Of a stretch of 64,000 nucleotides of DNA, positions 40,885-64,000 are shown in pieces. The stretch comes from Macrostomum lignano (Eukaryota). Below the pieces are notes generated by a model, which saw only the letters and a program-made list of their open reading frames with translations, did not search any database and was not told where the DNA came from. The position numbers and the translations under genes were made by a program. Location: positions 76,095 to 140,094 of the forward strand of contig NIVC01000729.1 in assembly GCA_002269645.1 (NCBI GenBank). Reading direction: 5' to 3'. The stretch's first letter is position 1. Each line of letters opens with the position of its first letter.

Positions 40885-40918
<34 letters not shown>

Positions 40919-40966: not shown

Positions 40967-41009
<43 letters not shown>

Positions 41010-44839: not shown

Positions 44840-46370
44840 ATCTGTTCTATCTCAAATCCAGGGCCCTATTCTATCCCCTGTCCTATCTCAAATCCAGGGC
44901 CCTATTCTATCCCCTGTTCTATCTCAAATCCAGGGCCCTATTCTATCCCCTGTCCTATCTCAAATCCAGGGCCCTATTCTACCCCCTGTTCTATCTCAAA
45001 TCCAGGGCCCTATTCTACCCCCTGTTCTATCTCAAATCCAGGGCCCTATTCTATCCCCTGTTCTATCTCAAATCCAGGGCCCTATTCTATCCCCTGTTCT
45101 ATCTCAAATCCAGGGCCCTATTTTATCCACCGTTCTATCTCAAATCCAAGGCCCTATTCTACCCCCTGCTCTATCTCAAATCCAGGGCCCTATTCTATCC
45201 ACCGTTCTATCTCAAATCCAGGGCCCTATTCTACCCCCTGTTCTATCTCAAATCCAGGGCCCTATTCTATCCACCGTTCTATCTCAAATCCAGGGCCCTA
45301 TTCTACCCCCTGTTCTATCTCAAATCCAGGGCCCTATTCTATCCACCGTTCTATCTTAAATCCAGGGCCCTATTCTACCCCCTGTTCTATCTCAAATCCA
45401 GGGCCCTATTCTATTCACTGTTCTATCTCAAATCCAGGGCCCTATTCTACCCCCTGTTCTATCTCAAATCCAGGGCCCTATTCTATTCACTGTTCTATCT
45501 CAAATCCAGGGCTCTATTCTATCCACTGTTCTATCTCAAATCCAGGGCCCTATTCTATCCACCGTTCTATCTCAAATCCAGGGCCCTATTCTACCCCCTG
45601 TTCTATCTCAAATCCAGGGCCCTATTCTATTCACTGTTCTATCTCAAATCCAGGGCCCTATTCTATCCACTGTTCTATCTCAAATCCAGGGCCCTATTCT
45701 ATCCACCGTTCTATCTTAAATCCAGGGCCCTATTCTACCCCCTGTTCTATCTCAAATCCAGGGCCCTATTCTATTCACTGTTCTATCTCAAATCCAGGGC
45801 CCTATTCTATCCACCGTTCTATCTCAAATCCAGGGCCCTATTCTATCCCCTGTTCTATCTCAAATCCAGGGCCCTATTCTATCCACCGTTCTATCTCAAA
45901 TCCAGGGCCCTATTCTACCCCCTGTTCTATCTCAAATCCAGGGCCCTATTCTATTCACTGTTCTATCTCAAATCCAGGGCCCTATTCTACCCCCTGTTCT
46001 ATCTCAAATCTAGGGCTCTATTCTATCCACTGTTCTATCTCAAATCCAGGGCCCTATTCTATCCACTGTTCTATCTCAAATCCAGGGCCCTATTCTACCC
46101 CTTGTTCTATCTCAAATCCAAGGCCCTATTCTACCCCCTGTTCTATCTCAAATCCAGGGCCCTATTCTACCCCCTGTTCTATCTCAAATCCAGGGCCCTA
46201 TTCTATCCCCTGTTCTATCTCAAATCCAGGGCCCTATTCTATTCACTGTTCTATCTCAAATCCAGGGCCCTATTCTATCCACTGTTCTATCTCAAATCCA
46301 GGGCCCTATTCTATCCACTGTTCTATCTCAGATCCAGGGCCCTATTCTATCCACTGTTCTATCTCAATAT
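44840..46370. repeat. Minisatellite, 36 bp TATCTCAAATCCAGGGCCCTATTCTATCCCCTGTTC
   Basis: Tandem array; explains the 584-aa YLKSRALFYPLF ORF. Confidence 0.97.
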
Positions 46371-46416
46371 GTTCAAACTCTTACTGCAATCTGCATTCAA
46401 CCGCCCCCTTATCCAG

Positions 46417-46667
46417 GTGCTCCGGAAACGAAGCAGTCACAGGACTCACAACCGGCCCAGTCGCAGGGCGCCCGGCCCAGCGTCGCCTCGGACGGCTCGC
46501 CATTATCGGACGACGCCGAAGGCAGCGAAACCGGCGGCAGCGCACGCGGCAGCATCGGAATGGAGTCCAGCTCCAGCCTGCTGAAAATGAGGGTGCAGAT
46601 GTCCGAGCCTCAGCTGCTGCTTGTTGAGGACCTCTCCGATCCCAATTGCAACGCTGTTGTGCTTAAT
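46417..46667 (+). CDS. VPS13: VPS13 exon 18
   Basis: My translation: GAPETKQSQ...LKMRVQMSEPQLLLVEDLSDPNCNAVVLN|GTGAGT; phase 1 to 0. Confidence 0.9.
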
Positions 46668-46689
46668 GTGAGTATCTGATCTGCCTCTG

Positions 46690-47560
46690 GTTACCGGTAT
46701 CTCTCACCTGTTCTCTCACGGTATCTCTCACCGGTATCTCTCACATGTTCTCTCACCTGTTCTCTCACCTGTTCTCTCACCTGTTCTCTCACCGGTATCT
46801 CTCACCTGTTCTCTCACCGGTATCTCTCACCTGTTCTCTCACCGGTATCTCTCAACGGTATCTCTCACCTGTTCTCTCAACTGTTCTCTCACCGGTATCT
46901 CTCACCTGTTCTCTCACCGGTATCTAAAACCGGTATATCTCACCTGTTCTCTCACCTGTTCTCTCACCGGTATCTCACCCGTATCTCTCACCTGTTCTCT
47001 CACATGTTCTCTCACCGGTATCTCTCACCTGTTCTCTCACCTGTTCTCTCACATGTTCTCTCACCGGTATCTCTCACCTGTTCTCTCACCGGTATCTCTC
47101 ACCTGTTCTCTCACATGTTCTCTCACCTGTTCTCTCACCGGTATCTCTCACTGGTATCCCTCACCTGTTCTCTCACCGGTATCTCACCGGTATCTCTCAC
47201 CTGTTCTCTCACCTGTTCTCTCACATGTTCTCTCACCGGTATCTCTCACCTGTTCTCTCACCGGTATCTCTCACCTGTTCTCTCACATGTTCTCTCACCT
47301 GTTCTCTCACCGGTATCTCTCACTGGTATCCCTCATCTGTTCTCTCACCGGTATCTCACCGGTATCTCTCACCTGTGTCTCTCACATGTATCTCTCACCT
47401 GTATATCTCTCTTATCTTTCTCACTTGTCAATCCCATCTTTTCATTTCACTTGTATATCTGACCTTCTCACTTGTCTTACATTCTCACTGTCTGTCTCAT
47501 CTGTATCTCTCACCTGTCTCTCTCTCACCTGTATATCTCACTAGTCTCCCCTATGTGTGC
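46690..47560. repeat. Compound minisatellite CTCTCACCTGTT / CTCTCACCGGTAT
   Basis: Tandem array. Confidence 0.95.
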
Positions 47561-47984
47561 CTAACCTGTCTCAAATGCCTCAAATTTTATATTTTTGATG
47601 AGTTTTTTATCCTCAATGTTACACTTTAGACTTGTGTTATGGCAGGAAAATAGTTATAAGGACTTATGTTCCCGTACGCAGGACAATCATTTATTTGTCT
47701 TTGTATTGGTGGCGTTTACAATTTAACTGCTCAGGTTCACTAGAATGATACTGACTTTGGATAGGCGCGGTATTTAGTGTTGCGATTTTTGCTAGACAAA
47801 GCGGGCTTGCTGAGGATTTTAACTATGAGATATTCGGTTGGAAAAGCAAATAAAATGCAGTCTTTAGTCTTTTCTCCATTTCTCTGGGTGTAGTATTTCG
47901 ATTTATTAAAATTGCATAGTGTTAGGACGATTCCCTGATGTGAATGGAGAGAATTCCTGTTTAGAATCATTTTCGTTTTACATA

Positions 47985-48640
47985 GGAATTCCCCCATTCG
48001 AGGTATTCCCAGTTAAAGGGAATTCCCATTTAAGGTATTTCCAAGTTATAGCCGGGAATTCCATTTTAGGTATTTCCCAGTTGTAGGGAATTCCCATTTG
48101 ACGTATTTCCCAGTAATATGGAATTCCTATTTGGATGATTTACCAGTTATAGGGAATTCCCATATGAGGTATTTCCCAGTTATAAGGAATTCCCATTTGA
48201 GGTATTTCCCAGTTGGAGGAACCTCTATTTGAGATATTTCATAGTTTAGGGAATTCCTATTTGTATTATTTCCCGGTTGTAGGGAATTCCAATTTGACGT
48301 ACTTCCCAGTATTGAAGTATTTCCCAGTAATATGGAATTCCCATTTGGATGATTTACCAGTTATAGGGAATTCCCATATGAGGTATTTCCCAGTTATAGG
48401 GAATTCCCATTTTGAGGTATTTCCCAGTTGGAGGAACCTCTATTTGAGGTATTTCCCAGTTTAGGGAATTCCCATTTGTATTATTTCCCGGTTGTAGGGA
48501 ATTCCCATTTGAGGTATTTCCCAGTTGGAGGAACCTCTATTTGAGGTATTTCCCAGTTTAGGGAATTCCCATTTGTATTATTTCCCGGTTGTAGGGAATT
48601 CCCATTTGAGGTATTCCCCAGTCGAATGAATTTCCGCTTG
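47985..48640. repeat. Minisatellite, ~33 bp, containing palindromic GGGAATTCCC
   Basis: Tandem array; about 9 perfect GGGAATTCCC counted by eye. Confidence 0.93.
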
Positions 48641-49541
48641 GTTCCAGGGCATTCCGAGTTGGTTATTTCGCAGTTAGGGGAATTTCTAAGCACTTAAGGA
48701 AGTCACTGTGAGCTCTCAGCTGCTGCCTTTGAAATGTTCACACCGTTAAGATTTTTTTAATTCTCTATTTTCCCTCCACTTTTCCTAAATCCTCACTTAT
48801 TCCTTATCTTCCTTTCGTTGGGAAACGCGTGAGGAGAATTCTCCCATGCCTCTATAAAAGAGGAATATGTAAGCATGCTCAAATTTCTTATAGGCAGAAA
48901 ATTGCTGCAGAAATTCTGCCTCCAGCCTCCTCTGATGTTTGCTCAGCAGCTCCTCATCACAGATAAATGTGCGCTGGCTTCTCTCCCAGTTCTATTGTAC
49001 TGGCGTATATTTGCTGCTCTTCACAAGTTAAAGATTTCTGTGGGCATACTTACGAGTTTGAGTATGAGTTCAATAATTTATTTATTAAAGCTGGATTGCC
49101 TATTAAAATATGCGATATAATTGCTTGAAAATTCTCTGGCAAATGACAATTTGTTCAGCTTCTTAGTAATTTGATATATAAGTTTAGCATTTGTATGTTC
49201 AATGCAATCAATCTTGTTGAAAATAACGTTGGTCTCATAAACGTGAACTGGTAGAAGCGTGCAATGAGAAATTGAATTGTGACACATGCGCAGTTATAAA
49301 CTACGAGTGTGACACATGCGCGCAATTATAAACTACAGGTGTGATACATGTGCGCAGTTATAAGCTACGGGTGTGACACATGACAGTAGAAAATTCACAT
49401 GCACGTTAAAGCCAGTGCGCGCTTATTCGTGTCTTTCAGTTGTGTCATTCGCGATTTCGAGTATTGGATTTTAATTAGGCACTCCCATATTTGGTTACTA
49501 TACGATAATGCTCATTTTATTCCGATTCCATTTTACTGCAG

Positions 49542-49664
49542 CTAAAATCGTCAGTGGATTATCGAAGGAACAGCAGCATTGAGCACTGCAAAATTGACGT
49601 CTCCAAGCTGCAGCTGTTTTGCTGTCCGTTCAACGAGGAGAAACGGCAGAATTCCTATATTGAG
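49542..49664 (+). CDS. VPS13: VPS13 exon 19
   Basis: LKSSVDYRRNSSIEHCKIDVSKLQLFCCPFNEEKRQNSYIE|GTGATT. Confidence 0.9.
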
Positions 49665-49729
49665 GTGATTTTTATCGATTTTTTAATCGTTTTGCTTGTA
49701 TTTGGGGATTTACTGACACTGTACGTTTT

Positions 49730-50510
49730 TGGATTTTCCCAGGGCTGTGTACATTGGGGTGGGTAGGGATTCCCCTGGAACTGTACATTGTGGTAGGTAG
49801 GGATTTCCCTGGAACTGTACATTGTGGTGGGTAGGGATTTCCCTGGACCTGTAATTGGGGTGGGTAGGGATTCCTCTGGGACTTAAAGTAAAAATTAGTC
49901 AGGGATTTCCCGTTGACTGTGACCATTATGATAGGTTAAGGTACCCTCCGAAACTATGTACATTGAGATTTTTTAGTTGTTTGTATAATAAATCTATTTT
50001 CCGGGTACGTTGGGATTTCCCCGAGACATTGCACAGTGGGATTTCCCTAAGACCGTGTTAAATTGGATTTCCGCAAGACCGTGTTAAATGGGATTTCCCT
50101 GAGACTGTTCACAGTGGGAGTTCCTTGTGCCTGTATAAAATGTTATTTTCCTGTGTCTGTATACAAAGGGATTTCCCTGTGCCTGTATACAAAGGGATTT
50201 CCCTGTGCCTGTATACAATGGGATTTCCCTGAGACTGTATACAATGGGATTTCCCCGTGGCTGTATACAAAGGGATTTCCCTGTGTCTGTATACAATGGG
50301 ATTTCCCTGTGCCTGTACACAATGGAATTTCCCTTGATTTCCCGAGACCTTTAGGACGGGATTTCCTTGTGTCTGTACACAATGGGATTTCCTTGTGTCT
50401 GTACACAATGGGATTTCCTTGTGCCTGTATACAATGGGATTTCCCTGTGCCTGTATACAATGGAATTTCCCTTGATTTCCCCAGACCTTTAGGATAGGAT
50501 TTCCCCAAGA
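49730..50510. repeat. Minisatellite, ~26 bp TGTATACAATGGGATTTCCCTGTGCC
   Basis: Tandem array; about a dozen GGGATTTCCC. Confidence 0.93.
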
Positions 50511-50581
50511 CCCAAAGAGTTAGGGAAAAGTTTTTGGATGAGAGATTTCAAGCTACTCGCTTCGCTCACTACCTGCCGCAG

Positions 50582-50761
50582 GTGATCTCCCCGTGCGACA
50601 TGTCGGTGGTTTATCATTCCGAGATTGATCCGAACTCTGCAAACGTGCCGCAAAAGCAGAAGATGGCCGTAATCTGCGAAAGCATATTTGTTAATATTAG
50701 TCCGCCAGTGATTCAGACTCTGGTGAAGATTTCTTCTGTGCTGACTAATGCTCAAGCTCTG
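50582..50761 (+). CDS. VPS13: VPS13 exon 20
   Basis: VISPCDMSV...IFVNISPPVIQTLVKISSVL|GTGAGT. Confidence 0.92.
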
Positions 50762-51175
50762 GTGAGTGTTAATTGCTTCAGTTGTCTACCTGTGTTATTC
50801 AAATTGCTATACAGAATCTGCTTTTAAACTAAACTAAATTTGGCGCGTATAATTATAATTTTGTTAACAAAATCGATTATAAAAATTTATGTCTGTTTGT
50901 CTGAACTAGGACGGGATTGAAGGAATTGACGATCAGAGTGTTGAGGTATTCTTTTATTTTAGAGCTCAAGAAAGTTGCTTTTTTCTTCAACTGATTTTTT
51001 ACATAATTTCTTTGGCCAAGGTGAATTTTCCATGTTTTTTCCTCTGTCCAACATTTTTTTGGTCAAACATTATTTATTATTTTTTTCGATCCAGGCCCTC
51101 AAGGTTTCAATATTTTTCTAGGTTTAAGTATAAATTTTAACAATTAACGAATAATTTTCAACTTGCCTGTGCCAG

Positions 51176-51278
51176 GAAACCGCGGACAATGACAAACCGG
51201 CCGAGCCGAAACTCTATGAGAACGGCCTGTGGCAGGTGCGACCGATTGAGTCTGAGAATCTGCCTTTCCTTAGCACCG
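51176..51278 (+). CDS. VPS13: VPS13 exon 21
   Basis: ETADNDKPAEPKLYENGLWQVRPIESENLPFLST; G|GTGAGT. Confidence 0.88.
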
Positions 51279-51369
51279 GTGAGTGTACAGCAGGGGGGTG
51301 GTTAAATCTACTGCTTTATCTGAGGCTTTCTTGGCTTCGTGTTATTGTGTCACTGTCATTATATCAGTC

Positions 51370-51950
51370 CTATGTCACTCTCTTTCCTAATGTCACTCTC
51401 CTATCACTCCCAGTGTCACTCTCCTCACTCCCAATGTCACTCTCCTCTGGCTCCCAATGTCCAATGTCACTCTCCTCTGGCTCCCAATGTCACTCTCCTC
51501 TGGCTCCCAATGTCCAATGTCACTCTCTGGCTCCCAATGTCCCATGTCACTCTCCTCTGGCTCCCATTGTCACTCTCCTCTGGCTCTCAATGTCACTCTC
51601 CTCTGGCTCCCAATGTCACTCTCCTCTGGCTCTCAATGTCACTCTCCTCTGGCTCTCAATGTCACTCTCCTCTGGCTCCCAATGTCACTCTCCTCTGGCT
51701 CTCAATGTCACTCTCCTCTGGCTCTCAATGTCCAATGTCACTCTCCTCACTCTTAATGTCACTCTCCTCACTTCTAATGTCACTCTCCTCACTTCTAATG
51801 TCACTCTCCTCACTCCCAATGTCACTCGTCACTTCTAATGTCACTCTCCTCACTCCCAATGTCACTCTACTCACTCCAAATGTCACCCTCCTCACTCCAA
51901 ATGTCACTCTCCTCACTCCTAATTTCACTCGCCTCTCTCTCCTAATGTAA
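51370..51950. repeat. Minisatellite, ~23 bp CAATGTCACTCTCCTCTGGCTCC
   Basis: Tandem array. Confidence 0.93.
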
Positions 51951-52844
51951 CTTCTGTCTTCTTATTATTGGCCTCTCTCCTACGTCAACTCTTTTCCTCA
52001 CGTGTTACTCTCTTCTCTCCTCTGTCACTTTCTCCCTATCACACTGTCATTTCATATACCATTCTTATTCACCACTCTATGTTTTATTAATGCCAGTGTT
52101 TTCAAGGCTTACGGCTATCAACTGTAGTTCTCTAATCAGTTCTCTAGAACCAAACCAGTACGGTACATTGTCTAGTGCATGTAAAAATACATTTATGCAT
52201 TTATATTACTGTCCATGCTGGGAGTCCAGACGCACAGGCAGACAGACAATCACAGGCTATAAGAGCTCGTGAAAGCGTGCTCAAAACTAATAACACCCGG
52301 CCGCGTTGCGCGTGCTGTGGACTTAAAAGCATGCACTACTGACCGACACTTATTGATTGAGAAGGGGGGGAGTGTTCTTCTAGTAGCACTCAATGCTGCA
52401 ACCAGATTTTGTTGCCGGTGTTACAATTGTGCCGAAAGGGAACAGAAAGTTTCGCTTGACTCTTCCGTGAGTCCGCCAGTCGTGAGTTTTAAGCTTTCTT
52501 TGAGCAGAAACTTTTTTTCCTAACTGGTAGTTATAGTTAGTTTCTGCCCTTGCCAGTGCCGCGGCCGACTGCTTTTTATTTGGTTCAAAATGCAGCGCCA
52601 CTGCTGCCTCTCTCCGTCTGTCTGTCTCGCTCATTTCCTGCACACGTGCGGACTCTGGCTTCACATTGCACCCCTATATTTCTCTCTGTGTGCGCCTCTT
52701 CGCTCATTTTCGAGGCTATACGTTTATATATTGGAATGCCAATTGAATTTGGCTCCGAAGTTTGACCAGAGTTCGTCAAATAAAATTAATTTGTTGACAG
52801 TGGGTGTTTAAATTTTTTGGCAAATTGTATGCGAAAAGAGATGC

Positions 52845-52848
<4 letters not shown>

Positions 52849-52915
<67 letters not shown>

Positions 52916-52930
52916 AAAAGAGAGAGAGAG
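52849..52930. repeat. (GA)n microsatellite
   Basis: Direct observation. Confidence 0.95.
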
Positions 52931-53113
52931 ATGGACAACACTTGAACTGCTGGTGCGTACACAGTACATTACACACGATCGCAAAAAGTCCGCACTGTGG
53001 AGCAGTCATATAATTTATTCAGTTGTCTATGGTAAAATTCCGCGAGCCCCGAGACTCTCGCGCGACCAACCCCCCATCCAAGGCACATAGAGTTTACAAT
53101 GCCTAACGATTAA

Positions 53114-53346
53114 GGGGGGCTCTAGCCTAGTGGTTAGGGCGTCGGAGTCACGACTTGAAAGGTCGTCATTATGCGTCATTGGTCAAGACTCTTACCAACA
53201 TAAGCTGGGGTAATTGAGAGTGTGTTTGTGTGTATGTGTGGCGACCCCCCAGTCCTTGGACTGAGCAGCCGTACGCAACCTTCCGATGCGCCGCGCGATA
53301 GCTGCGACTGAGCTGTCGGTTGTACATGTGCCGATTAGGGCACTGG
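53114..53346 (+). mobile_element. tRNA-derived SINE (A box present, B box lost)
   Basis: GGGGGGCTCTAGCCTAGTGGTTAGGGCGTCGG tRNA-like head; body shared with 62920-63043. Confidence 0.7.
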
Positions 53347-53750
53347 TTTTTTTACACTTCAGGCTCTGGGTTTGGGTCTTGTTGAATCAGCGCTGTTGGT
53401 AGTTGAAAGTGCAACCTTTTTGAGTCATCCGCTATCATGGTTATCTGAATATGCATAGGTTACTTCTATGGGCCTCGAGCGAACTGGTTGGACCCAGTGT
53501 CCAGAAGAATTGTACCCTATCTGCAACATCTCAGTGCGTCTTTGTTTAAGTTCTCGATTCATGTGTTATCGAAAAGTTGGCAAACCTTTTTATTTGGCGT
53601 TACAATTTTGTAGTTTAAAAATTGAGCAAAGAACAATTTTTTTGCATTGTTCTGTTCAAACCTGTTTAAAAACTTAACTGCTCACTTTTTGTTGTGATAA
53701 AACTGACACTTGTATAGAATGATTTTTTTATATTGCTTCCTCATGCGCAG

Positions 53751-53842
53751 ACGCAACTTCTCCCGATGGTACAGCCATGGCTGAGCAAGGCTTCGATGTT
53801 GGGGCCGCCTTGGACGAGATTGAACAGCGCCGAAAGCAGGAG
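53751..53842 (+). CDS. VPS13: VPS13 exon 22 (last exon found in the window)
   Basis: GCGCAG|AC GCA...; DATSPDGTAMAEQGFDVGAALDEIEQRRKQE|GTAGGT; phase 1 to 0. Weakly conserved, supported mainly by phase and splice sites. Confidence 0.75.
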
Positions 53843-53889
53843 GTAGGTTTCTGTCTTGCTTAAATTAGAATGGCAGTTTTATTGATATT

Positions 53890-54545
53890 ATTGTTTAGTG
53901 CACTTTTAGGGAGAGAGGCGGGCGGAGTGGGGTGGGGCACTTTATGGGAGAGAGACGGGCGGAGTGAGGTGGGGCACTTTTAGGGAGAGAGGCGGGCGGA
54001 GTGAGGTGGGGCACTTTAAGGGAGAGAGGCGGGCAGAGTGAGGTGGGGCACTTTAAGGGAGAGAGACGGGCAGAGTGAGGCGGGGCACTTTTAGGGAGAG
54101 AGGCGGGCGGAGTGGGGTGGGGCACTTTAAGGGAGAGAGGTGGGCGGAGTGGGGTGGGGCACTTTTAGGGAGAGAGGTGGGCGGAGTGGGGTGGGGCACT
54201 TTTAGGGAGAGAGGCGGGCGGAGTGAGTTGGGGCACTTTAAGGGAGAGAGGCGGGCAGAGTGAGGTGGGGCACTTTAAGGGAGAGAGACGGGCAGAGTGA
54301 GGCGGGGCACTTTTAGGGAGAGAGGCGGGCGGAGTGGGGTGGGGCACTTTAAGGGAGAGAGGTGGGCGGAGTGGGGTGGGGCACTTTTAGGGAGAGAGGT
54401 GGGCGGAGTGGGGTGGGGCACTTTTAGGGAGAGAGGCGGGCGGAGTGGGGTGGGGCACTTTATGGGAGAGAGACGGGCGGAGTGAGGTGGGGCACTTTTG
54501 GGAGAGAAGCGGTCGGAGTGGGGTGGGGCACTCTATGTAGAGAGG
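53890..54545. repeat. G-rich minisatellite, 37 bp GAGAGAGGCGGGCGGAGTGGGGTGGGGCACTTTTAGG
   Basis: Tandem array. Confidence 0.95.
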
Positions 54546-56303
54546 CGAGCGTAAAAATTCATTTATATTGGGAAAATTAGAAATGTTTGGGTTGTTATAG
54601 AGGCTCAGTAAGGCCAAGATTAAGAAACAAAAAATACCTATATAACCAGACGTGTTTATTAGCTTCATAATATCTTAATTGGTTGTATCTTGCTCACGAT
54701 TTTGCTATCATTGTCAAGGACAGCCGGACCCTATAGTTGACCTCAATTTACTCAAGTCAGTGTATTTTGTATTCGTGAATCAGTCTCAGACACGTGTGTA
54801 ACACAAGTCAGGCGGTTATTGTGTATAATTACTAAGTCTTTTTTTAACAATGGGTCTCTCGTCGGTAACTTTGCCCTGCCTCAAAGGCACTGCGGGATGC
54901 CAAGCCTTAAGCGGCGCATTGCCGACTGAGAGAAAAAGGGAATTGTGCGCTTTTTTTAAAAAAAAAGATCCTACCCCTGTTCAGGAAGAGTTATGGGAGC
55001 TAGGCTAAGGTATTTTCCCCATCTTCTCCTTTACGACTGGGCAAGTAAAGTCTGCTTCGCCTAAGATGAATTGTTTTGTTGTTTAGAAATAAATACAACT
55101 CATACTGCCATGCTATAGAAATCGATCAAATTTATTGGCGATCCCCATTATTAAAGTTTAGATTTCGCACGATTTTACAAGTTGTCACACTGAGCGCAGT
55201 AAGCTGATTGATTGAATGTCTTGCCGTCACCCTTTCATCGCTCGCTTCTTACTTTGCTTAACGCCTCCTGTGCCCAGTTCTACGAGTTTAAGTTCTCACT
55301 CAGCCCCGCGTACCACAAATCTCGTCTCTTCCCACTCGCCGTGACCCTCCATGCAGCTCTCGGACCCGCTAACTGTTCCCCCCTATAGTCGTACTTGTAG
55401 GAATTTGATTAGCATAAGTGGACTTCGGGAAGTGAGGTCGTCTGCTGCTACTGTTTCTGCCTTCTGCTGCTTTTGGAGGTCGAACCCCCTCCCCCATATG
55501 TCCCTCATCGCTCTCTCTCTCCCCCTCTCTCTCTCATCTGACGAAAGGCCACTCATGCATTCCAATAGCTGGAGACTGGGCTATGAAACGCTTGTGTGAG
55601 CCCGCGTTTGTGTGTATGTGTGCGCGCGCGCGTGTGTGTGACTTGGCTTAAAATTGTGCTGACTGCTTCTGGGTTCGATTTAAAGCCAGGGCTTAAGACC
55701 TCTGGCCTGAGTCGGGTCAGAAATGCGATATGATTTGCTCTCTTTCCCCTGCTTCCCTTATCTGGCACTGTCTCAAATAAAGCATCTTAGACGATTGAAC
55801 ACTGTTGACTCTCGCTTGTGAGTCTCAGTTAAAAAAGTCAACTCTATATGCATCAGTATATAAGTTTGCGGTTCATCATACCATCAACTAAATAATCATT
55901 GTATTTGTCTCTCTGATTAAAATCTTAGCATCAACGTTAGCTTTGATTATTGAGGCATCAATTCTTTGAAACTGGCTTTCTATCGAGAAAATCGTAGCTA
56001 ATTTAACACCATATTATATAACGAAGACACAATGTAAAACAACATTTGAAGTGTGTTTCATTGTCTTGCAAAAATTAATGCAATGCTTTAGTAATAATAC
56101 ATGCATGCGATAAATATACATAATTCATATACAACAGTTTCAAATTTAAAAGTTTTGTAACAAATACGCTCAAGTATATTGAAAAATATCTACTAGGACA
56201 AGAAAAACTGAATGAAATACGACGCAATGTGTGTCCGATCAGTTGGTTCTTTGTTTAAAAAACCCGTCATTGGTTAATTGGACCCTGACTCACACCCACG
56301 CGT

Positions 56304-58946
56304 TTAGAGCGTGGCTTCGTTGTAACTCACCGCCGACTCATCGTCTTCTGGCGATCGGAATGTTGACATGCGCGAAGTCCTTGGGAATGTGACCACGCTA
56401 GGGTAGAGGCTCAGGCTGCTGACGCTTGGTACCCGACTGTTTGATAGGGCCACCTGACTGCCCTGCTGATGCCGAGTGCACTGGTGCTGCTGGCTATTCA
56501 ACAGCTGCAGCTGATGTTGATGCTGAAGCTGTTGCTGAAGCTGCCGTTCAGCCGATGTGTCGTAGACGTTGGAGTAGCTCACGCACTCTTGCGGGGTTTT
56601 GTTCAATAAGCCGCCTCGTTGGTCTTCGTTAAGAGTTTGAAAGCTGGACGAATAGTCTCGCGTGTTACTCGATGCCGTCTTCGACGCCGCCAGCTGGTCC
56701 ACTGTTCTCAGCGGCATTCTGTACAGGACCTGCTTCCAGAAGTTCTTCTTGCCGTAGCGAACTATTGACTTACTGGCTGCCGCATTGCGTCTAACCAAAT
56801 TCTGCGGCAGGTGCTTAATGTTTGGAAACAAAATATGAATCAGCCTATTGGCCTGACGGGGCTGAGTTCTGGTTAGAAAGGTGACAGTCAGTTGATAATC
56901 TGTACACACGTCCACGTCTGAGATGAAGCTCTCTGTAATCACCGCTATGACCCGTTTGCTATTCTCTACCGCGTGGCACACGGCGCTATACGTTAGTAGG
57001 CCCGGAATGCAGGCTCTGTCATGTGTGCAGAGGACGTAGGGACTCTTCCTGTTAGTTAGCTTTTCTAGTAGCACGGATATAACCCAGTCGCTGTCGCTTG
57101 GATGGAACAACACAAAAGCGTCACAGCGCTTCAGCTCACCGTTGCACTCGTCGCGATCAAACGGATGAAAGCCGAACCTAGTAAATAGGCTCACCCTTGC
57201 GCAGAAAAGCAAGAAAAAGGCCAGCGTTATCAGCGCTAAGACGCCGCTGACAGCTGACGAGCTGAGCGCCAGCTGATCGTAGCTTCGATTTGAAGACCTT
57301 GGATCGGGCCGATCGCAGAAGTCCTTCAGTCTCATTTCGAGCAGCGGCCTGTTAAATAGCCACGTTGGCTCAGCGCAGCGTATCTCGTTTTCGTGTCTCA
57401 GGTAGGGTCGCATCTTATGCAGCCATTCGCTCATCCAGCTGTTGTTACAGTGGCAGGACCAGGGATTATGATCCAATCGCATCTCTTTCAAGTGCGGAAA
57501 CATCAGCTCGACAATCTGCCTGTCCAGCGCGGTGAACAGATTGTGATTGAGGTTGATTACCTCCAGGCGTCTTAGCTTGTTAAAAAACTTTACAGGCATT
57601 GTTTCAATGCCGGTGCCTCGCAGATCCAACGTTTGCGCGTCTTTGTAGACGCTTGGCATACCTGGCAGGCTTCTTGACAGGCGGCTGGCGCTAAAGTTAA
57701 ATCGGTACACGTATTGATCTGGCAAGTCTGTCATTTCTCTTCTGTGCAGCAGGCGGCCTAGGTTCACACCAAAGCAATCGACTGATATAGTCTTACGCCA
57801 AGGCTCTTCGGTACATGTACACTGTTCGTTGTTGCACTTGTCCCGGCATACGAGGTCTTCTCGCTTCAGTAGTAGTTTGAATGCTGAGTTGAATACTGAC
57901 TGATAGTTTAGACTCAATGGCTTCACGCAGTACGGTAGAGCCATCGGATCCGGTAAGAAATGAGAAATGTTACTTGCTGATACGTACATGTTGTAGTCCA
58001 AACAGTCGCACTCCAGGGGGTTCTGATGCAAACTGATGATGGTGATTGCATGCCGGGCGCCCAGCACTCTGATTGTCTTGTCGTCCATGTTCCATCCTCT
58101 AATCAGATCTATCAGGTGTCTCACCCTGTTGTTAGTCAGGCTCAGGACTAGGTTGATTCTAGTGACAAGTTCTTTTGTCCAGCGAATGTGAGTCGCAAAA
58201 TTCTGTCTTGGGTCTGGACTGCCTTCCGTGTCATCAAAGCGTTGAATTCGATTGTGATCGAGCAATATACGCAGCTTCTCCTCGCTGTGCATTGCTCGAA
58301 TCTTAAGTGGCCAGTTGGCAAGAGCTTCCAATTTGTTGTACGATAAATCGATGTAGTTTAAGTAGTTGGCAGACGATTCAAATGCCTTTGAAGAGACATA
58401 GCGTATTTGATTGTGTATGATGCTGAGCTTCTGCAAGGACGGTGTAGCTAGACAGTAGTCTGTCAGATTCACTAACAAATTTCTGTCTAGTACGATCTCT
58501 TTGAGCTCTTTGAACGGACTAAACATCCTTGGTGGAAGCTGTCTGATTCTATTGTCGGTCAGGTTGAGATGGGTCAGCTTGGTGAGCAGTGCTAGCTTGG
58601 GTAGAACGTCCTGCATTCGCTCCACCCCAGACATGACTAGCACGTTGAGATCGACCAGAGCTGGGCATTCGATCAGCCTGGCAACCAGCTCGCCGCTGCC
58701 CTGTGCGTAGCCGCAGTCCAGGCTGAGATGGTACTGCGCATAAGCGTAGCGAAACTCGCACTGTCTGCACTGCGTTGGGCAATAGCGCCTGCACTGCACC
58801 AGCCGGTCCTTCAGACTGGCTGACCCCGTTGCGCTGCCTACAATGGCAGATTGTAGCGACGGCAGATGCAGTGACAGCAGCTGCAACACTAGCAATAGTA
58901 GCTTCCCCGATTGCAGCCGTTCCATGTTCTGTTGAAGATCAGTCAT
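56304..58946 (-). CDS. Toll-like receptor, multiple-cysteine-cluster (protostome) type, single coding exon, 880 aa
   Basis: Hydrophobic signal (LLLLVLQLLSL), Cys-rich LRRNT, LxxLxLxxN repeats, LRRCT NPLECDC, second LRRNT (C..C.C....VDC), more LRRs, LRRCT NPWSCHC, TM (SAVSGVLALITLAFFLLFCA), HPFDRDEC linker, TIR box1 CDAFVLF, box2 LCTHDRACIPG, box3 FWKQ. Start at 58946 or 58925. Confidence 0.93.
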   Translation of the reverse strand: MTDLQQNMERLQSGKLLLLVLQLLSLHLPSLQSAIVGSATGSASLKDRLVQCRRYCPTQCRQCEFRYAYAQYHLSLDCGYAQGSGELVARLIECPALVDLNVLVMSGVERMQDVLPKLALLTKLTHLNLTDNRIRQLPPRMFSPFKELKEIVLDRNLLVNLTDYCLATPSLQKLSIIHNQIRYVSSKAFESSANYLNYIDLSYNKLEALANWPLKIRAMHSEEKLRILLDHNRIQRFDDTEGSPDPRQNFATHIRWTKELVTRINLVLSLTNNRVRHLIDLIRGWNMDDKTIRVLGARHAITIISLHQNPLECDCLDYNMYVSASNISHFLPDPMALPYCVKPLSLNYQSVFNSAFKLLLKREDLVCRDKCNNEQCTCTEEPWRKTISVDCFGVNLGRLLHRREMTDLPDQYVYRFNFSASRLSRSLPGMPSVYKDAQTLDLRGTGIETMPVKFFNKLRRLEVINLNHNLFTALDRQIVELMFPHLKEMRLDHNPWSCHCNNSWMSEWLHKMRPYLRHENEIRCAEPTWLFNRPLLEMRLKDFCDRPDPRSSNRSYDQLALSSSAVSGVLALITLAFFLLFCARVSLFTRFGFHPFDRDECNGELKRCDAFVLFHPSDSDWVISVLLEKLTNRKSPYVLCTHDRACIPGLLTYSAVCHAVENSKRVIAVITESFISDVDVCTDYQLTVTFLTRTQPRQANRLIHILFPNIKHLPQNLVRRNAAASKSIVRYGKKNFWKQVLYRMPLRTVDQLAASKTASSNTRDYSSSFQTLNEDQRGGLLNKTPQECVSYSNVYDTSAERQLQQQLQHQHQLQLLNSQQHQCTRHQQGSQVALSNSRVPSVSSLSLYPSVVTFPRTSRMSTFRSPEDDESAVSYNEATL

Positions 58947-60189
58947 TCACCGACGTCTAGGACTTCGAATTGCCGGGCGATTCGTTCATTTCGCAGTTTC
59001 CTTGGAGACCTGTGTGTGTGCGTTTCTGTGCGTTGCTTCGTTCTCGATCTCCGGTGTTTTTTTTAATTATACGCTTCAATGGCTTCTGTAACTGTCGCAG
59101 TAGGAATTGACTTCGAAGTCTCAATATTGACTTAGCTCTTCAATTTTTTGCCGGAGCTGTCTCTTTTTCCTAAGACCTCTCGCAACCTGAAGTGTCACCT
59201 GCTTTTAAAAGCTGATTTTTTCCCAAAATCGGGCCAAGTCTGAGCGGTGGCTCCCACTCCCTGCCGTCCATCCCCAATCCTTCTCCTCCCTCTCTGTCCC
59301 TGCCTCCCCAGTGCAGGTTTTGCAATGCTTCGCTTCACTGGTTTGATTGGACTTCCATGCGCCTGTCCAATCAAGCTTTAGTCTCTTTCTATTGCCACGC
59401 CACGAGAAACTCTTGGCCGCCTGCTGCACACTTTCTCGGACTCGGGGGGAGCGAGAGTTCTTTCGTGCTTTTAAAATTTTTTAGGAAGTTTTTTTTCTTC
59501 TATCAACTTTAAGCAGCGTCCCGGTTGCATTGTTTGGGTCAGCTGGAATGTGTTTGACCGCGCAACTTTCACTTTGTATTGAATAGCCACGTCCGCTAGC
59601 TCAAGATGCCTGTCGCTTTACATTCACTCGCTAGAGCTACACGCACTTTCAGGATCCCTATTTTAACTTTCTATAGTTTATAATTTGAGGTTAACCGTTA
59701 ATAAAAGATCTTTATTGGCTATACATGTAGACTTTTCTCTGAGCGGCAAGGCATCGGATTTTATTGTCGCGCACATCGGTACAGTCGTCTCTCTGGCGGG
59801 ACTCGTGTATCTCACAGTCGCCAGCGCATTTCCGTGACTGCTGATGCAGAATTTCTCAATGCGGATTCTTGCCACCGCGAGTCTATTACTTGTTATAATG
59901 TCTCTCACTTCCGTATTCCATGTCTGTTAAGCATCAGGCTACATGACTAAACCAAGTTTAACTGCTGTAACAGCCCTTCTCTCTGTTGTCATTGTCATTC
60001 ATTCTCAATGCCGTTTTAGGAAGAACTTTATTGACTTTAACGCCAAAAAGTGTATTTTTGGTACCTATTGTACAAAACAGGTAAGAAAAGAGTAGAGAAA
60101 AGAAGAGAGAGAGAGAAAACGAAATGAGAAAAGGGTAGCCAGTTGAGACAGAATGAAGGAGACTGGTGAGAGAAAGGGTGAGAGAGGAT

Positions 60190-60480
60190 CAGATAAGAGA
60201 GACAGGTGAGATCGAGAGATGGAGACAGGTGGGATCGAGAGGGGAGACAGATGAGATCGAGAGGGGGAGACAGGTGAGATCGAGAGATGGAGACAGGTGG
60301 GATCGAGAGGGGAGACAGATGAGATCGAGAGGGGGAGACAGGTGGGATCAATAGGGAGAGACAGGTGGGATCGAGAGGGGAAGACAGGTAGGAGCTAGAG
60401 GGGGAGACAGGTGGGATCGAGAAGGAGAGACAGGTGGGATCGAGAGGGGAGACAGGTAGAAGCGAGATGGGGGAGACAAG
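60190..60480. repeat. Minisatellite GAGACAGGTG(A/G)GATCGAGAGGG
   Basis: Tandem array. Confidence 0.9.
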
Positions 60481-61489
60481 TGGAAGAAAATGGGAGTCAG
60501 TTAAAATAAATCCAATGTAGGGCTCAAATTAGGGAGCAGAGCTATAGTTTAAAAAATGGATAAATGATGAGTTGCTTTTATGAAGCAGTATCATATATTT
60601 TAGATTCTAGTCAAATCATAATATTATTATAATATTAATCATATACTTAAATTCTATACAAATACTTAAATCTGAAATAAAAGGTGTTCAACTTCATATG
60701 TATGCAAGCTTATTCATTTGGCAAGTGCGTTTTGCCCCCCCCCTCCTCATCGCTAATAGCTGGTGCTAATAGTTAAGCACTGTTTGATTTTCTCATCTGC
60801 GATATTTGACTACTCCAATTCAGGAGAGGGGGGGGTTAACTTGCCGCTGTGCAGCCCGGGTCGATAATGCATAATTGGCATAATTTGCCAACCAAACCTG
60901 GCCGATGTAATGTGCACTTTAATGAGTAGCACCCTGGGAGTTTGGCAGGTGCACCGCGTGTGTGTGTGCCGTACGGATAAATTTAGAGGAGAATAATAAA
61001 ATAAAAATAACTATGAATTATCATTATTGGTCCGTACGCGCGGGAGTGTCCGGTGGTCCGGGTTGGCCACTGGATCTGCGTATATATTAGCTCCATATTA
61101 TAAAATATAAAAAACTCTTAAATAGCTTCGTAGTGCCCGAGGAATATAGTTAAACGGGATAATTTATGGACTTCCTGGCAAGGCGAGACTCGCCCTTCTT
61201 CCCACAGTATTAGCCTTCTTCTTCTTGGCTATCCCTGACTGTCTCTCTTTAGACTGGATATCTTAATTTCCAATAAAACCAAGAAAACGTACCATTTCTT
61301 TTGTAAGAGTTCTCTTTGTGTACATGTGCTTGGTTTTTAGTTTCGTTCACTGTTTTTGAACCAAGTTTGATTGTAACCATATTTTCAAATATGACAACAG
61401 ACCTCAAGAAGGACCTCCGAAGACTGTATGTCGTTGAAACAGCTTCTCGGGTTATAATTATCTTATATGTTGAAGCAAGCATCAAATAA

Positions 61490-62050
61490 GTGCTGCAATA
61501 TTATTTGTTGCGATCACAGATAATTAGCACATCATAAATGACGTTAGATGTTGTTGCAATCGCGGATAACTAGCACACCATAAATGACGTTAGATTTTTT
61601 TTGCAATTACGGATAATTAGCACACCATAAATGACGTCAGATGTTGTTGCAATCGCGGATTATTAGCACATTATAAATGATGTAAGATTTTGTTGCAATC
61701 GCGGATAATTAGCACCCCATAAATGACGTAAAGATATTATTGCAATCGCGGATAATTAGCACACCATAAATGACGTCAGATGTTGCAATTAAGGATAATT
61801 AGCACATTATAAATGATGTAAGATTTTGTTGCAATCGCGGATAATTAGCACCCCATAAATGACGTCAAATGTTGTTGCAATTATCGGTCGCAAGAAAATC
61901 GGTCCAGCCGTTTTTGCTAAAATCGATCACATACCCACATACCTACCGACAGACCATTTTTAGTATATGGAGATAACTGACGTCAGATGTTGTTGCAATC
62001 GCGGATAATTAGCACATTATAAATGATGTAAGATGTTGCATTCGCGGACA
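61490..62050. repeat. Minisatellite, 46-47 bp GCAATCGCGGATAATTAGCACACCATAAATGACGTCAGATGTTGTT
   Basis: Tandem array interrupted by a Helitron-like end. Confidence 0.9.
61890..61975 (+). mobile_element. Helitron-like non-autonomous element 3' end (copy 2)
   Basis: AAAATCGGTCCAGCCGTTTTT...ACATAC...CATTTTTAGTATATGGA, matches 10105-10200. Confidence 0.5.
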
Positions 62051-62919
62051 AGCAAAACATTACACGGAACTCAGTAGTTGAAGCATACGTCAGATAAAGA
62101 AGCACAATAACTACACCGGATGCTGTTGCAATCTCTCAAATTGACACTAGATAGACCGACCTAGCGCTAAGTACCATCATATAACAACTCAGTTTGTTGA
62201 AAAAAATTACTGAAACATCACATACTGCCGAGACAGTCCAGACGCTTATGGCCTATGATAACTTGGCAATAACTTCGATCGCAGCTTTGTGGACTGTTGC
62301 AACGACACAGATATTTTTATGCTGATAACTTCGGCTCGGCAGAACTTTGAAACTCTATCCGACACACATTGTCGAGAGTCTGTCCCGCCGTGTTCTAACA
62401 CACTTGCGCTTCTGCTGCTAGCCCGGTCTGGGCTATATCAGTGTGCCTTCCCTCATCCTTGACCCGGGGCCCGCCTCTACTTTCATTATTCATGCTAAAT
62501 TTGTTCCTCTTTTGCCCCGGCTCCAGCCTTCAGTGGTCTGTCTCGATTATTTTCCTACACATCGCGGCAATAGCAGAAACAACAACAGCTAGCTGGCGTC
62601 CACCATTCGCCCCCTCCCACTGTATCCTGCTGTTAAATATTTAATTTGACAGAATAATTTTATCTATATAATATTACTTACATGTGAAAGGCTTTTCTGG
62701 AATTCATTCTGTTATGCTTTCAGCTTTGACTGTCGAGCGCACCCCTATTCTTTCATGCTGTCTGCTTGCTTTTCTATCTTCTGGCGGTACATTTCTGAGA
62801 AAAGTGCAGCTTTTTTTCGGGTTCGATTCTTGACTCAATCAGAACAATTTGTGCCCTTAAGAAAGATTCTTAACTCTGCATTGCTTCAGTTCAACCAGTT
62901 GTAAAATGGGTGCCAGCGT

Positions 62920-63043
62920 TAGCTGGGGTAATTTAGGGTATGTGTGGCGATCCATCAGTCCTTGGACTGAACAGCTTTCAGATGCGCCGCGCAATAGCTG
63001 CGGCTGAGCTGTCGGTTGCACATCTGGCCCAATTGAGGCAGGT
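62920..63043 (+). mobile_element. 5'-truncated second copy of the SINE at 53114
   Basis: AGCTGGGGTAATT..GTGTGGCGA..CAGTCCTTGGACTGA..GATGCGCCGCGC.ATAGCTGCG.CTGAGCTGTCGGTTG shared. Confidence 0.75.
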
Positions 63044-64000
63044 GTAATCAATTATTATTTAGCGAAGAAGTCACACTGTTTCCCGCCAATGTCTAATTTA
63101 ACGCCCAAACCCTAACTTGATGTCTCATACCTGAATCTAATGCTCTAATTTCCTAATTTTGCCCTTCAACTCTTCATAGTTAATGCGCCAACCCCACTGT
63201 AAATGTGACGTTGAAATCCTCAATTTAAATGTGCCTCTTGTCTCTTCCTAACGGACTCAAAAAGGGTTTCACATCTTGCAAAATGTGTGAAAATCCAAAA
63301 GGAAATTGGATTTTCCGTTGTCTTTTAAAGAAACAGCAAGCATTGCCCAGGTATTTTGAGCGGGGATGATCTGAGTGGCCTTTGATTAGCTAGTGGATAA
63401 TTGGATCTCAAATTTGAGCAGTTTAATGAGTCCCTTGGTCATAATAACTTCTACTAGGCGTTGAAACTAGCTAATTCGAAAAAGTAAACAGTTGGAATAT
63501 TGTTGCGCATATTTGTATTCTACGAAGGCTCCGATTCCAAACATGGAATTTGGATGTGAATTATGATGCAGCAGCCACCTTCCGTGCAGCTGTGTTGCGA
63601 GGTCCCTATGGGAGTCGGACGCACACTGAATGGGCGTTTTATATTGTGCCAAAATTAGACAAATTAGCTGGTGTTGCACACACATGCATACAAGCCTGCC
63701 ATTCTGCACTAATGTTGTTTTATGCGTTCCTATTTGTATCGCAGCTCCACTGGAAATAATATAATCATATTTTATTCTAATTAATAATTTATTAGCCTGA
63801 AAAGAAGTCGCAACCACCTGATGTTCGCTCGCATTGTATGGTTCTGTTGGACAAGCCTCTCTTGGGTAGTTGCTATGGGAGAGCGGAAAAGTCTCAAAGA
63901 TCTTTGGTAGTTTGTTCAAATATCGATAACTTGTGTGACCTTTCCATCAACTAGTCCTAGGTGAATAAGATAGATAACTAGATGTATAAATTTCTGTATC

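What the first reader, a model, noticed from the sequence alone, without database searches (positions are those of the whole stretch)
56304..58946. Intronless Toll-like receptor nested antisense inside a VPS13 intron
Seen: VPS13 has an open donor at 53843 after about 2010 codons and I found no further exon in the window; the TLR ORF is intact, single-exon and free of the repeats that fill the host introns. Established: VPS13 proteins exceed 3000 aa, so the gene must continue past the TLR. Inference: the TLR was inserted (retroposition or duplication) and is under purifying selection. Convergent transcription could couple an immune receptor to a lipid-transfer gene.
Basis: partly seen in the sequence, partly recalled or inferred. 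Interest (0 to 1): 0.75.

Follow-up and report, generated by a model that had tools for sequence, protein, structure and literature searches.

The report
Unannotated Toll-like receptor in a flatworm
The window comes from the flatworm Macrostomum lignano and holds an intact, selectively constrained Toll-like receptor gene inside an intron of VPS13; the nesting is ordinary, but published surveys say flatworms, and this species by name, have no Toll-like receptors.

Summary
The 880-codon ORF at 56304-58946 (-) encodes signal peptide, LRRNT, LRRs, an internal LRRCT-LRRNT pair, more LRRs, LRRCT, one TM helix, a TIR domain and a disordered tail. That is a canonical P-type (multiple-cysteine-cluster) Toll/TLR.

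The window is Macrostomum lignano contig NIVC01000729.1. The annotated 3541-aa VPS13 (PAA77695.1) matches the window through residue 2010, and its next exon lies 4.8 kb past the window end. The TLR therefore sits antisense in a 14,965-bp intron, the largest of the gene, with no assembly gap.

Two further VPS13 copies on other contigs carry the same intact ORF in the same intron. The three copies differ at 15 synonymous and 3 conservative non-synonymous codons (dN/dS about 0.06, P = 9e-8) with no indels, while flanking intron DNA is 95-98% identical with many indels. Purifying selection is thus shown.

There are no retroposition hallmarks and no evidence for regulatory coupling with VPS13. The gene is not called in the assembly's annotation. 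Two pan-metazoan surveys report zero TLRs in Platyhelminthes, one naming M. lignano. That contradiction is the interesting part, not the nesting.

The parts
56304..58946 (-). Complete single-exon CDS (880 codons + TAA) of a P-type/mcc Toll-like receptor. It is not called as a gene in GCA_002269645.1.
   Evidence: ORF. Pfam LRR_8 1.7e-18, LRR_4 4.4e-12, TIR 27.4 bits against a cut-off of 21.3. PDB TLR3 E=1e-20. Absent from the called genes of L001, L002 and L003 and from the protein collection.
58848..58946 (-). N-terminal signal-peptide region (residues 1-33, hydrophobic core 15-27, ...SLQS|A). A second ATG (Met8, 58923-58925) has the better Kozak context AACATGG and is preceded by the acceptor-like cttcaacag.
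   Evidence: Hydropathy and sequence. The cleavage site and true start codon are inferred.
57282..58847 (-). Ectodomain (residues 34-555): LRRNT-like Cys cluster (C52-C94), about 8 LRRs (about 100-305), internal LRRCT (NPLECDC, C313/315/340), internal LRRNT (C367-C391), about 4 LRRs (413-495), membrane-proximal LRRCT (NPWSCHC, C498/500/524/544), and 6 N-glycosylation sequons.
   Evidence: Motif scan. Collinear BLASTP alignment with the moth Toll-type receptor P0001, E=2e-20. TLR3 LRRCT alignment. AF2 LRR block pLDDT 70-87. Foldseek hits to TLR5, Toll5A and TLR3/7/8/9.
57774..58022 (-). Internal LRRCT-LRRNT junction (residues 309-391), which defines the multiple-cysteine-cluster (P-type) architecture.
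   Evidence: HQNPLECDC aligns with GGNPLECDC, and QCTCTEEPWRKTISVDC aligns with NCTCYHDPSWSANVVDC in P0001. Pfam's capping models did not fire.
57198..57272 (-). Single transmembrane helix (residues about 559-583).
   Evidence: Highest Kyte-Doolittle window, 2.53 at residue 565. AF2 helix 556-590.
56712..57134 (-). TIR domain (residues about 605-745) with box 1 (CDAFVLF), box 2/BB loop (HDRACIPG, proline kept) and box 3 (FWKQV).
   Evidence: Pfam TIR above gathering score. PDB TIR domains of TLR2 (1.5e-9), MyD88, IL-1RAcP (covers residues 14-145 of 146), TLR6 and TLR1. AF2 gives five beta-alpha units, pLDDT about 65-83.
56307..56711 (-). C-terminal Q/S-rich tail (residues 746-880), predicted disordered.
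   Evidence: pLDDT below 50 for residues 748-880; composition.
53750..53842 (+). VPS13 exon 22 (residues 1980-2010, DATSPDG...EIEQRRKQE), the last host exon before the nested gene.
   Evidence: 100% match to P0080 up to residue 2010. Splice donor context.
53843..64000 (+). First 10.2 kb of VPS13 intron 22 (full length 14,965 bp, L001 58487-73451, window-equivalent 53843-68807). It is the largest intron of the gene and holds the TLR plus three minisatellite arrays.
   Evidence: Donor GTAGGT and acceptor TTGGCAG|ATG, phase 0. Exon 23 at L001 73452-73571. Only one N run in L001, at 3247-4644. Intron size list.
5357..53842 (+). VPS13 (A/C-like) exons 1-22, encoding residues 1-2010 of 3541 (VPS13_N and most of VPS13_M). 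VAB and VPS13_C are encoded downstream of the window.
   Evidence: tblastn of P0080. Pfam on P0080 and on exon pieces. PDB VPS13C alignment.

Best explanation
The ORF is a real, functional, single-exon gene of Macrostomum lignano encoding a canonical type I Toll-like receptor of the protostome (multiple-cysteine-cluster) type.

Shown: the architecture is signal peptide, LRRNT, about 8 LRRs, LRRCT, LRRNT, about 4 LRRs, LRRCT, one TM helix, a TIR domain with all three boxes and the BB-loop proline, then a 135-residue disordered tail. The gene lies on the opposite strand inside the 15-kb intron 22 of the VPS13 (A/C-like) lipid-transfer gene. This arrangement predates the duplication that gave the species its three copies of the locus, and the protein sequence has been held constant by purifying selection since then.

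Inferred from the family: ligand-driven dimerisation of the ectodomain brings two TIR domains together and recruits a TIR adaptor such as MyD88. As in insect P-type Tolls, the ligand may be an endogenous cytokine-like protein rather than a microbial molecule.

Also inferred: the nesting is a neutral result of a compact gene sitting in a very long intron. The gene has its own promoter and poly(A) site and has no functional tie to VPS13. It escaped annotation, and so the published TLR surveys of predicted proteins, probably because it is a lowly or conditionally expressed single-exon antisense unit inside another gene.
For: Gene and family:
- 880-codon ORF.
- Pfam LRR_8, LRR_4 and TIR above cut-offs.
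- PDB TLR3 match spanning LRRCT-TM-TIR.
- TIR-only query hits TLR2, MyD88, IL-1RAcP, TLR6 and TLR1 crystal structures.
- TM peak.
- AF2 shows a TM helix and a five-unit beta-alpha TIR fold.
- Foldseek top hits are TLR5, Aedes Toll5A, TLR7/8/9/3, Drosophila Toll and C. elegans TOL-1.
- Collinear alignment with a moth Toll through every module.

Organism and nesting:
- P0080 = PAA77695.1, M. lignano.
- Window = L001 4645-68644 at 100% identity.
- Exon 23 at L001 73452, with no gap in between.
- Same arrangement in L002 and L003.

Selection:
- 15 synonymous versus 3 non-synonymous changes, dN/dS 0.058, P = 9e-8, and 0 indels.
- dS (0.008-0.025) is of the same order as flank mismatch rates, and flanks are 95-98% identical with 6-43 gap positions.
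- Codon usage correlates with VPS13 exons (r = 0.66, against 0.30 for the antisense control).

Not annotated.
Against: - There is no expression evidence of any kind. The gene is missing from the assembly's annotation and from a 5.8-billion-protein collection that includes transcriptome-derived sequences.
- The nearest homologues are only 20-24% identical, so orthology to a particular TLR clade is untested.
- The Pfam TIR score is modest (27 bits) and Pfam's LRRNT and LRRCT models do not fire.
- The AF2 model is poor overall (mean pLDDT 50).
- The three copies are very close (18 differences), so the selection test covers only recent history.
- Downstream pathway components in M. lignano were not examined.
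Confidence: 0.82

Rival explanations
1. The gene is real and constrained but is not an immune sensor. It would act in development, cell adhesion or neuronal wiring, as several insect Tolls and C. elegans TOL-1 do, or signal without the MyD88/NF-kB route.
For: The architecture is P-type/mcc. P-type TLRs are thought not to bind microbial patterns directly (PMC6043800). The ectodomain is short (about 12 LRRs). The best structural and sequence relatives include Toll5A, Drosophila Toll and TOL-1.
Against: Nothing here separates immune from developmental roles, and many Tolls do both. The TIR boxes and BB-loop proline needed for adaptor binding are intact.
Confidence: 0.35
2. It is a young processed retrocopy or DNA-level duplicate that landed in the intron. 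It would still be intact mainly because it is recent.
For: It is single-exon and sits in the largest intron of the host. Nested genes often arise by insertion of short duplicates into long introns (PMC5174743).
Against: There is no poly(A) remnant and no credible target-site duplication. No related protein above 24% identity appeared in a collection that holds M. lignano proteins, so no parental copy is known. Single-exon structure is the norm for invertebrate TLRs (PMC10279657). The 15:3 synonymous to non-synonymous ratio shows selection, not mere youth. The insertion predates the triplication of the locus.
Confidence: 0.1
3. It is an assembly artefact, a contaminant or foreign DNA joined to a flatworm contig.
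For: The ORF is unannotated and has no close relative in any database searched. A 1398-bp N run lies just before the window.
Against: Three independent contigs (NIVC01000729.1, NIVC01000217.1, NIVC01000622.1) carry it between the same two VPS13 exons, with no N in the intron. The flanks carry the same kind of minisatellites as the other host introns. Codon usage resembles the host gene. The N run is 50 kb away, upstream of VPS13 exon 1.
Confidence: 0.02
4. It is an unexpressed relic: an ORF that still looks intact but is transcriptionally dead.
For: It is absent from the annotation and from all protein sets.
Against: dN/dS of 0.06 and zero indels across three copies, while the neighbouring intron accumulates indels and 2-5% mismatches, is not expected of a dead sequence.
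Confidence: 0.06

Closest known systems
P-type / multiple-cysteine-cluster Toll receptors of protostomes (Drosophila Toll, Aedes Toll5A, lepidopteran Tolls; TLR clade alpha of Orus-Alcalde et al. 2021)
   Same: The module order is the same: LRRNT, LRRs, internal LRRCT-LRRNT, LRRs, LRRCT, TM, TIR. The alignment is collinear through all modules (E=2e-20). Foldseek hits include Toll5A and Drosophila Toll.
   Different: Identity is only 22%. The ectodomain is about half as long (about 525 aa and about 12 LRRs, against about 750-1000 aa). There is a long Q/S-rich disordered C-terminal tail. Clade membership has not been tested by phylogeny.
Vertebrate TLR3 / TLR2 (solved structures)
   Same: These are the best PDB sequence matches. 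TLR3 matches across LRRCT-TM-TIR (E=1e-20) and the TLR2 TIR domain matches at E=1.5e-9. Boxes 1-3 and the BB-loop proline are conserved.
   Different: Vertebrate TLRs have a single cysteine cluster (V-type), whereas this protein has an internal LRRCT-LRRNT pair.
TLR-like (TIR-only and LRR-only) proteins of planarians and other flatworms
   Same: Same phylum, and they share the TIR or LRR building blocks.
   Different: In S. mediterranea no LRR was found linked to a TIR domain (PMC7958881; PMC6043800). Here LRR, TM and TIR are in one ORF.
Intronic nested genes on the opposite strand (for example Drosophila 2mit in tim2, vertebrate LRRTM genes in alpha-catenin introns)
   Same: A compact gene, often LRR-encoding, lies wholly inside a long intron of a large host gene on the opposite strand (PMC3786989, PMC3933685, PMC3814207).
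   Different: Nothing unusual. This host also harbours a second nested gene (Intu_longin_1 family) in another intron.

Membership tests
Canonical Toll-like receptor (criteria of PMC8609888: TIR + TM + at least one LRR in one protein) | Extracellular leucine-rich repeats | tested here: met
   Pfam LRR_8 1.7e-18 and LRR_4 4.4e-12. About 12 LxxLxLxxN motifs. AF2 LRR block pLDDT 70-87. Foldseek hits to TLR ectodomains.
Canonical Toll-like receptor | Single transmembrane segment between the LRRs and the TIR | tested here: met
   The only strong internal hydropathy peak is at residues 559-583. AF2 helix 556-590. This segment aligns with the TM of TLR3 and of moth Toll.
Canonical Toll-like receptor | Cytoplasmic TIR domain with boxes 1-3 | tested here: met
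   Pfam PF01582 27.4 bits against a cut-off of 21.3. PDB TIR domains of TLR2, MyD88, IL-1RAcP, TLR6 and TLR1. Five beta-alpha units in the model. DAFV.., RACIPG and FW motifs present.
Canonical Toll-like receptor | N-terminal signal peptide (type I topology) | tested here: met
   Hydrophobic core at residues 15-27 followed by SLQS|A. This is by inspection only; no dedicated predictor was available.
Canonical Toll-like receptor | Transcribed, and signals through a TIR adaptor | not testable with these tools
   No RNA-seq or pathway data are accessible. The gene is missing from the annotation.
P-type / mcc TLR | More than one LRRCT, with an internal LRRNT | tested here: met
   NPLECDC (residue 309) and NPWSCHC (residue 494) LRRCT motifs, plus an internal C-x3-C-x4-C-x-C...VDC LRRNT, align column for column with a moth Toll. 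Caveat: Pfam's LRRCT and LRRNT models gave no hit.
TLR clade alpha / beta / gamma (PMC8609888) | Placement in a TIR or full-length phylogeny | not tested
Nested intronic gene | Whole gene lies between two consecutive exons of a host gene on one contiguous sequence | tested here: met
   Exon 22 ends at L001 58486, the TLR is at 60948-63590 (-), and exon 23 starts at 73452, with no N in between. The same holds in L002 and L003.
Processed retrogene | Poly(A) remnant at the 3' end and flanking target-site duplication | tested here: not met
   No A-tract lies within 1 kb downstream of the stop on the gene strand. The only flanking repeat is 12/13 nt, at chance level, with no adjacent tract.
Processed retrogene | Intron-containing parental paralogue elsewhere in the genome | not testable with these tools
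   The whole M. lignano genome is not searchable here. No related protein above 24% identity was found, in a collection that holds M. lignano proteins.
VPS13 bridge-like lipid-transfer protein (host gene) | VPS13_N (chorein), VPS13_M, VAB and VPS13_C regions in order | tested here: met
   Pfam on P0080: 619, 220, 78 and 55 bits. Exons 1-22 in the window are 100% identical.

The most novel reading that the evidence does not exclude
This is the first canonical Toll-like receptor found in Platyhelminthes. TLRs were then not lost at the base of the phylum, as argued from their reported absence in M. lignano. They persist in the early-branching Macrostomorpha and were lost later, in the lineage leading to triclads and the parasitic Neodermata. 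The published zero is an annotation artefact, caused by a single-exon gene hidden antisense in an intron.
Probability: 0.6. Interest if true: 0.7.

Novelty: new member of a known kind. Interest (0 to 1): 0.6.

Why it matters
Two pan-metazoan surveys report no TLRs in Platyhelminthes. One lists M. lignano with 0 TLRs and uses that to place the loss early in flatworm evolution (PMC8609888). The other ascribes the phylum's loss possibly to parasitism (PMC10279657). Reviews of planarian immunity repeat that flatworms have only TIR-only and LRR-only proteins (PMC7958881, PMC6043800).

An intact, constrained LRR-TM-TIR gene in M. lignano would move the inferred loss to a later node. It would show that surveys of predicted proteins can miss nested single-exon genes. 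It would also give an experimentally tractable flatworm (RNAi and transgenesis are, to my knowledge, established in M. lignano) a receptor with which to ask whether Toll signalling operates in flatworm immunity or regeneration.

The nesting in VPS13 is by itself of little consequence.

Tried and rejected
- Exact look-up of the TLR protein found nothing on record. I first read that as the genome not being in the collection. That was wrong: the genome is there and only this gene is unannotated.
- Pfam scans of all open + strand segments flanking the TLR found no hidden VPS13 exon in the window. tblastn with 65 full-length VPS13 proteins agreed.
- Rfam and tRNA scans of the window were empty.
- Poly(A)-signal search: the nearest canonical minus-strand hexamer downstream of the stop is AATAAA at 55131-55136, about 1.2 kb away, which is not informative.
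- Pfam on the isolated cysteine-cluster segments gave no LRRNT or LRRCT hit. The mcc call therefore rests on alignment.
- AF2 with a 7-sequence alignment gave a weak global model (pLDDT 50), so I used only local features and family-level Foldseek hits.
- I considered and rejected contamination or misjoin, pseudogene, and retrocopy readings (see rivals).
- A literature search for any reported Macrostomum or planarian canonical TLR found none.
Full report
OBSERVATION. The minus strand of the window carries one 880-codon ATG-to-TAA ORF at 56304-58946. An in-frame TGA lies directly upstream of its ATG. The next longest ORFs in 54-64 kb are only 150 and 104 aa. Minisatellite arrays lie on both sides (53900-54551, 60199-60483, 61505-61881) but none inside the ORF. 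On the plus strand, VPS13-type exons run from 5357 to 53842. The last one ends ...CAG GAG|GTAGGT, so the donor GT is at 53843, phase 0.

WHAT THE ORF ENCODES. Pfam finds LRR_8 (1.7e-18), LRR_4 (4.4e-12) and TIR (27.4 bits, cut-off 21.3). The best solved-structure match is TLR3 (E=1e-20), with one alignment running through the membrane-proximal LRRCT, the membrane region and the TIR domain. The cytoplasmic part alone hits the crystal structures of the TIR domains of TLR2 (1.5e-9), MyD88, IL-1RAcP (nearly full-length), TLR6 and TLR1.

Sequence inspection gives the following layout:
- a hydrophobic signal-peptide core at residues 15-27;
- an N-terminal Cys cluster;
- about 8 LRRs, then NPLECDC...C (LRRCT);
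- C-x3-C-x4-C-x-C...VDC (LRRNT), then about 4 LRRs;
- NPWSCHC...C...C (LRRCT);
- one strong TM peak at residues 559-583;
- TIR box 1 (DAFVLF), box 2 (RACIPG, proline retained) and box 3 (FW);
- a Q/S-rich tail.

A BLASTP alignment with the best full-length relative, a moth Toll-type receptor, is collinear through every one of these modules (E=2e-20, 22% identity). That makes it a P-type/multiple-cysteine-cluster receptor under the criteria quoted in PMC8609888. Pfam's short LRRNT and LRRCT models did not fire on the isolated segments.

An AlphaFold model from a 7-sequence alignment is weak overall (mean pLDDT 50). It still shows a confident LRR block, a single helix at 556-590 and a five-unit beta-alpha TIR fold at 605-745. 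Foldseek's best PDB matches are full-length TLR5, Aedes Toll5A, TLR7/8/9/3, Drosophila Toll and C. elegans TOL-1. All three defining features of a canonical TLR are therefore met.

ORGANISM AND HOST GENE. The N-terminal VPS13 exons hit VPS13A/C-like proteins, best in molluscs at about 30% identity. An exhaustive search seeded with one of these returned 65 full-length VPS13 proteins. One of them, P0080 (3541 aa), matches the window's 22 exons at 100% identity through residue 2010 and then continues MQVTVSQIKL... with no counterpart in the window. P0080 is PAA77695.1 (BOX15_Mlig010693g5) of the flatworm Macrostomum lignano. Its gene lies on contig NIVC01000729.1 of GCA_002269645.1 (locus L001). 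The window is L001 4645-68644 at 100% identity. Pfam on P0080 shows VPS13_N, VPS13_M, VAB and VPS13_C in order.

NESTING. Exon 23 (residues 2011-2050) is at L001 73452-73571, which is 4.8 kb beyond the window end. It is preceded by TTGGCAG| and is in phase with exon 22. The only N run in L001 is at 3247-4644, upstream of VPS13. Intron 22 is thus 14,965 bp, the largest in the gene (the next largest gaps between exons are 9.6 and 7.3 kb). The TLR ORF (L001 60948-63590, minus strand) is the only non-repeat ORF of 120 aa or more in it, apart from one unremarkable 150-aa TTG-start ORF.

M. lignano has two more copies of this VPS13, on contigs NIVC01000217.1 (L002) and NIVC01000622.1 (L003). Both carry the same 2643-nt ORF, intact, on the minus strand, between the same two exons, in introns of 15.9 and 15.1 kb without gaps. 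A misjoin is excluded, and the arrangement predates the multiplication of the locus.

SELECTION. The three ORF copies differ at 18 sites with no indel. Fifteen differences are synonymous and three are conservative replacements (I279V, M482T, A799V). Nei-Gojobori gives dN/dS = 0.058 for each pair. The binomial probability of so few replacements under neutrality is 9e-8 for the most divergent pair. dS (0.008-0.025) is of the same order as the mismatch rate of the flanking intron DNA, which is 95-98% identical and carries 6-43 gap positions per alignment. So the coding sequence, and only it, is constrained. Codon usage correlates with the VPS13 exons (r = 0.66, against 0.30 for the antisense control).

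ORIGIN. There is no poly(A) remnant within 1 kb downstream of the stop. The only direct repeat flanking the gene is a 12/13-nt match of the kind expected by chance, with no adjacent tract. Invertebrate TLRs are typically single-exon (PMC10279657). No protein more than 24% identical appeared in a collection that holds M. lignano proteins. Retroposition is thus unsupported, though a whole-genome search could not be run. Genes nested in long introns are commonplace (PMC3814207, PMC5174743). The same VPS13 hosts a second nested gene. Nothing suggests functional coupling with VPS13.

WHY IT IS INTERESTING AFTER ALL. The ORF is not among the genes called on any of the three contigs. It is also absent from the 5.8-billion-protein collection.
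- Orus-Alcalde et al. 2021 list M. lignano with 0 TLRs. They argue that this absence in an early-branching lineage supports loss of TLRs early in platyhelminth evolution (PMC8609888). Their method was a TIR-profile search of protein sets, which cannot see an unannotated gene.
- Saco et al. [quoted passage not shown]
- Reviews say flatworms have only TIR-only and LRR-only proteins.
- I found no paper reporting a canonical flatworm TLR.

MECHANISM.
- Shown: a type I membrane protein with a two-block LRR ectodomain and an intact TIR, kept by selection.
- Inferred from the family: ligand-induced dimerisation, TIR-TIR recruitment of an adaptor, and possibly an endogenous ligand as in insect P-type Tolls (PMC6043800).
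- Unknown: expression, ligand, pathway, and whether the role is immune or developmental.

VERDICT. The core observation and the 'nested antisense TLR under purifying selection' reading are confirmed. The retroposition and transcriptional-coupling ideas are not supported. The nesting is ordinary. The notable result is a canonical, hitherto unannotated TLR in a phylum, and a species, reported to lack them.

Noticed in passing
L001 93753-95558 (+); also L002 103150-104952 and L003 100514-102316: A second nested gene lies in the same host. It gives a 600/601-aa product with Pfam Intu_longin_1, on the same strand as VPS13, inside the intron between the exons ending at L001 92679 and starting at 97054. 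It is present in all three copies.
   Followed up: partly
L002 86054-87613 (-): A retroelement integrase ORF (Integrase_H2C2 + rve, 519 aa) sits inside the VPS13 gene range. It is listed among the called genes of L002 but not of L001 or L003, so it may be a copy-specific insertion.
   Followed up: no
window 13.2-13.6, 14.8-15.7, 16.7-17.5, 18.4-19.1, 27.2-27.6, 28.3-29.0, 33.4-34.4, 36.8-37.6, 37.9-38.8, 39.1-40.3, 40.6-41.1, 41.8-43.8, 44.7-46.4, 46.7-47.5, 48.0-48.6, 50.1-50.5, 51.4-52.0 and 53.9-54.55 kb: Nearly every VPS13 intron is filled with long, strand-asymmetric minisatellite arrays (periods about 12-50 bp). They create long spurious ORFs in several frames. One region (41.8-43.8 kb) aligns to itself at about 92% identity over 1.9 kb in many registers.
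   Followed up: partly
window 58923-58946 (-): The second in-frame ATG (Met8) has a stronger Kozak context (AACATGG) than the first. It is immediately preceded by a branch-point-like ctgat and an acceptor-like cttcaacag. This could be a cis- or spliced-leader trans-splice acceptor, which would make Met8 the true start.
   Followed up: no
window 53843-53860 (+): If intron 22 were retained, the VPS13 frame would read through the donor for only 5 codons (VGFCL A*) before a stop. A truncated 2016-aa isoform lacking VAB, APT1 and the C-terminus is conceivable but unsupported.
   Followed up: no
L001 3247-4644 (ends one base before window position 1): A 1398-bp run of N (scaffold gap) ends exactly where the window starts, about 5.3 kb upstream of VPS13 exon 1.
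   Followed up: yes
P0080 / UniRef100_A0A267FV54: UniRef names the host protein 'UBA domain-containing protein', which would be a VPS13D-like feature. Pfam here reports only VPS13_N, VPS13_M, VAB and VPS13_C, and the N-terminus is closest to VPS13A/C-like proteins. The paralogue assignment of this flatworm VPS13 is unsettled.
   Followed up: partly
P0080, P0183, P0184 (L001, L002, L003): The three 3541-aa VPS13 copies differ at only 4-7 residues. Gene names g1, g3 and g5 imply further copies, which fits (from my own knowledge) the recent genome duplication described for M. lignano.
   Followed up: partly
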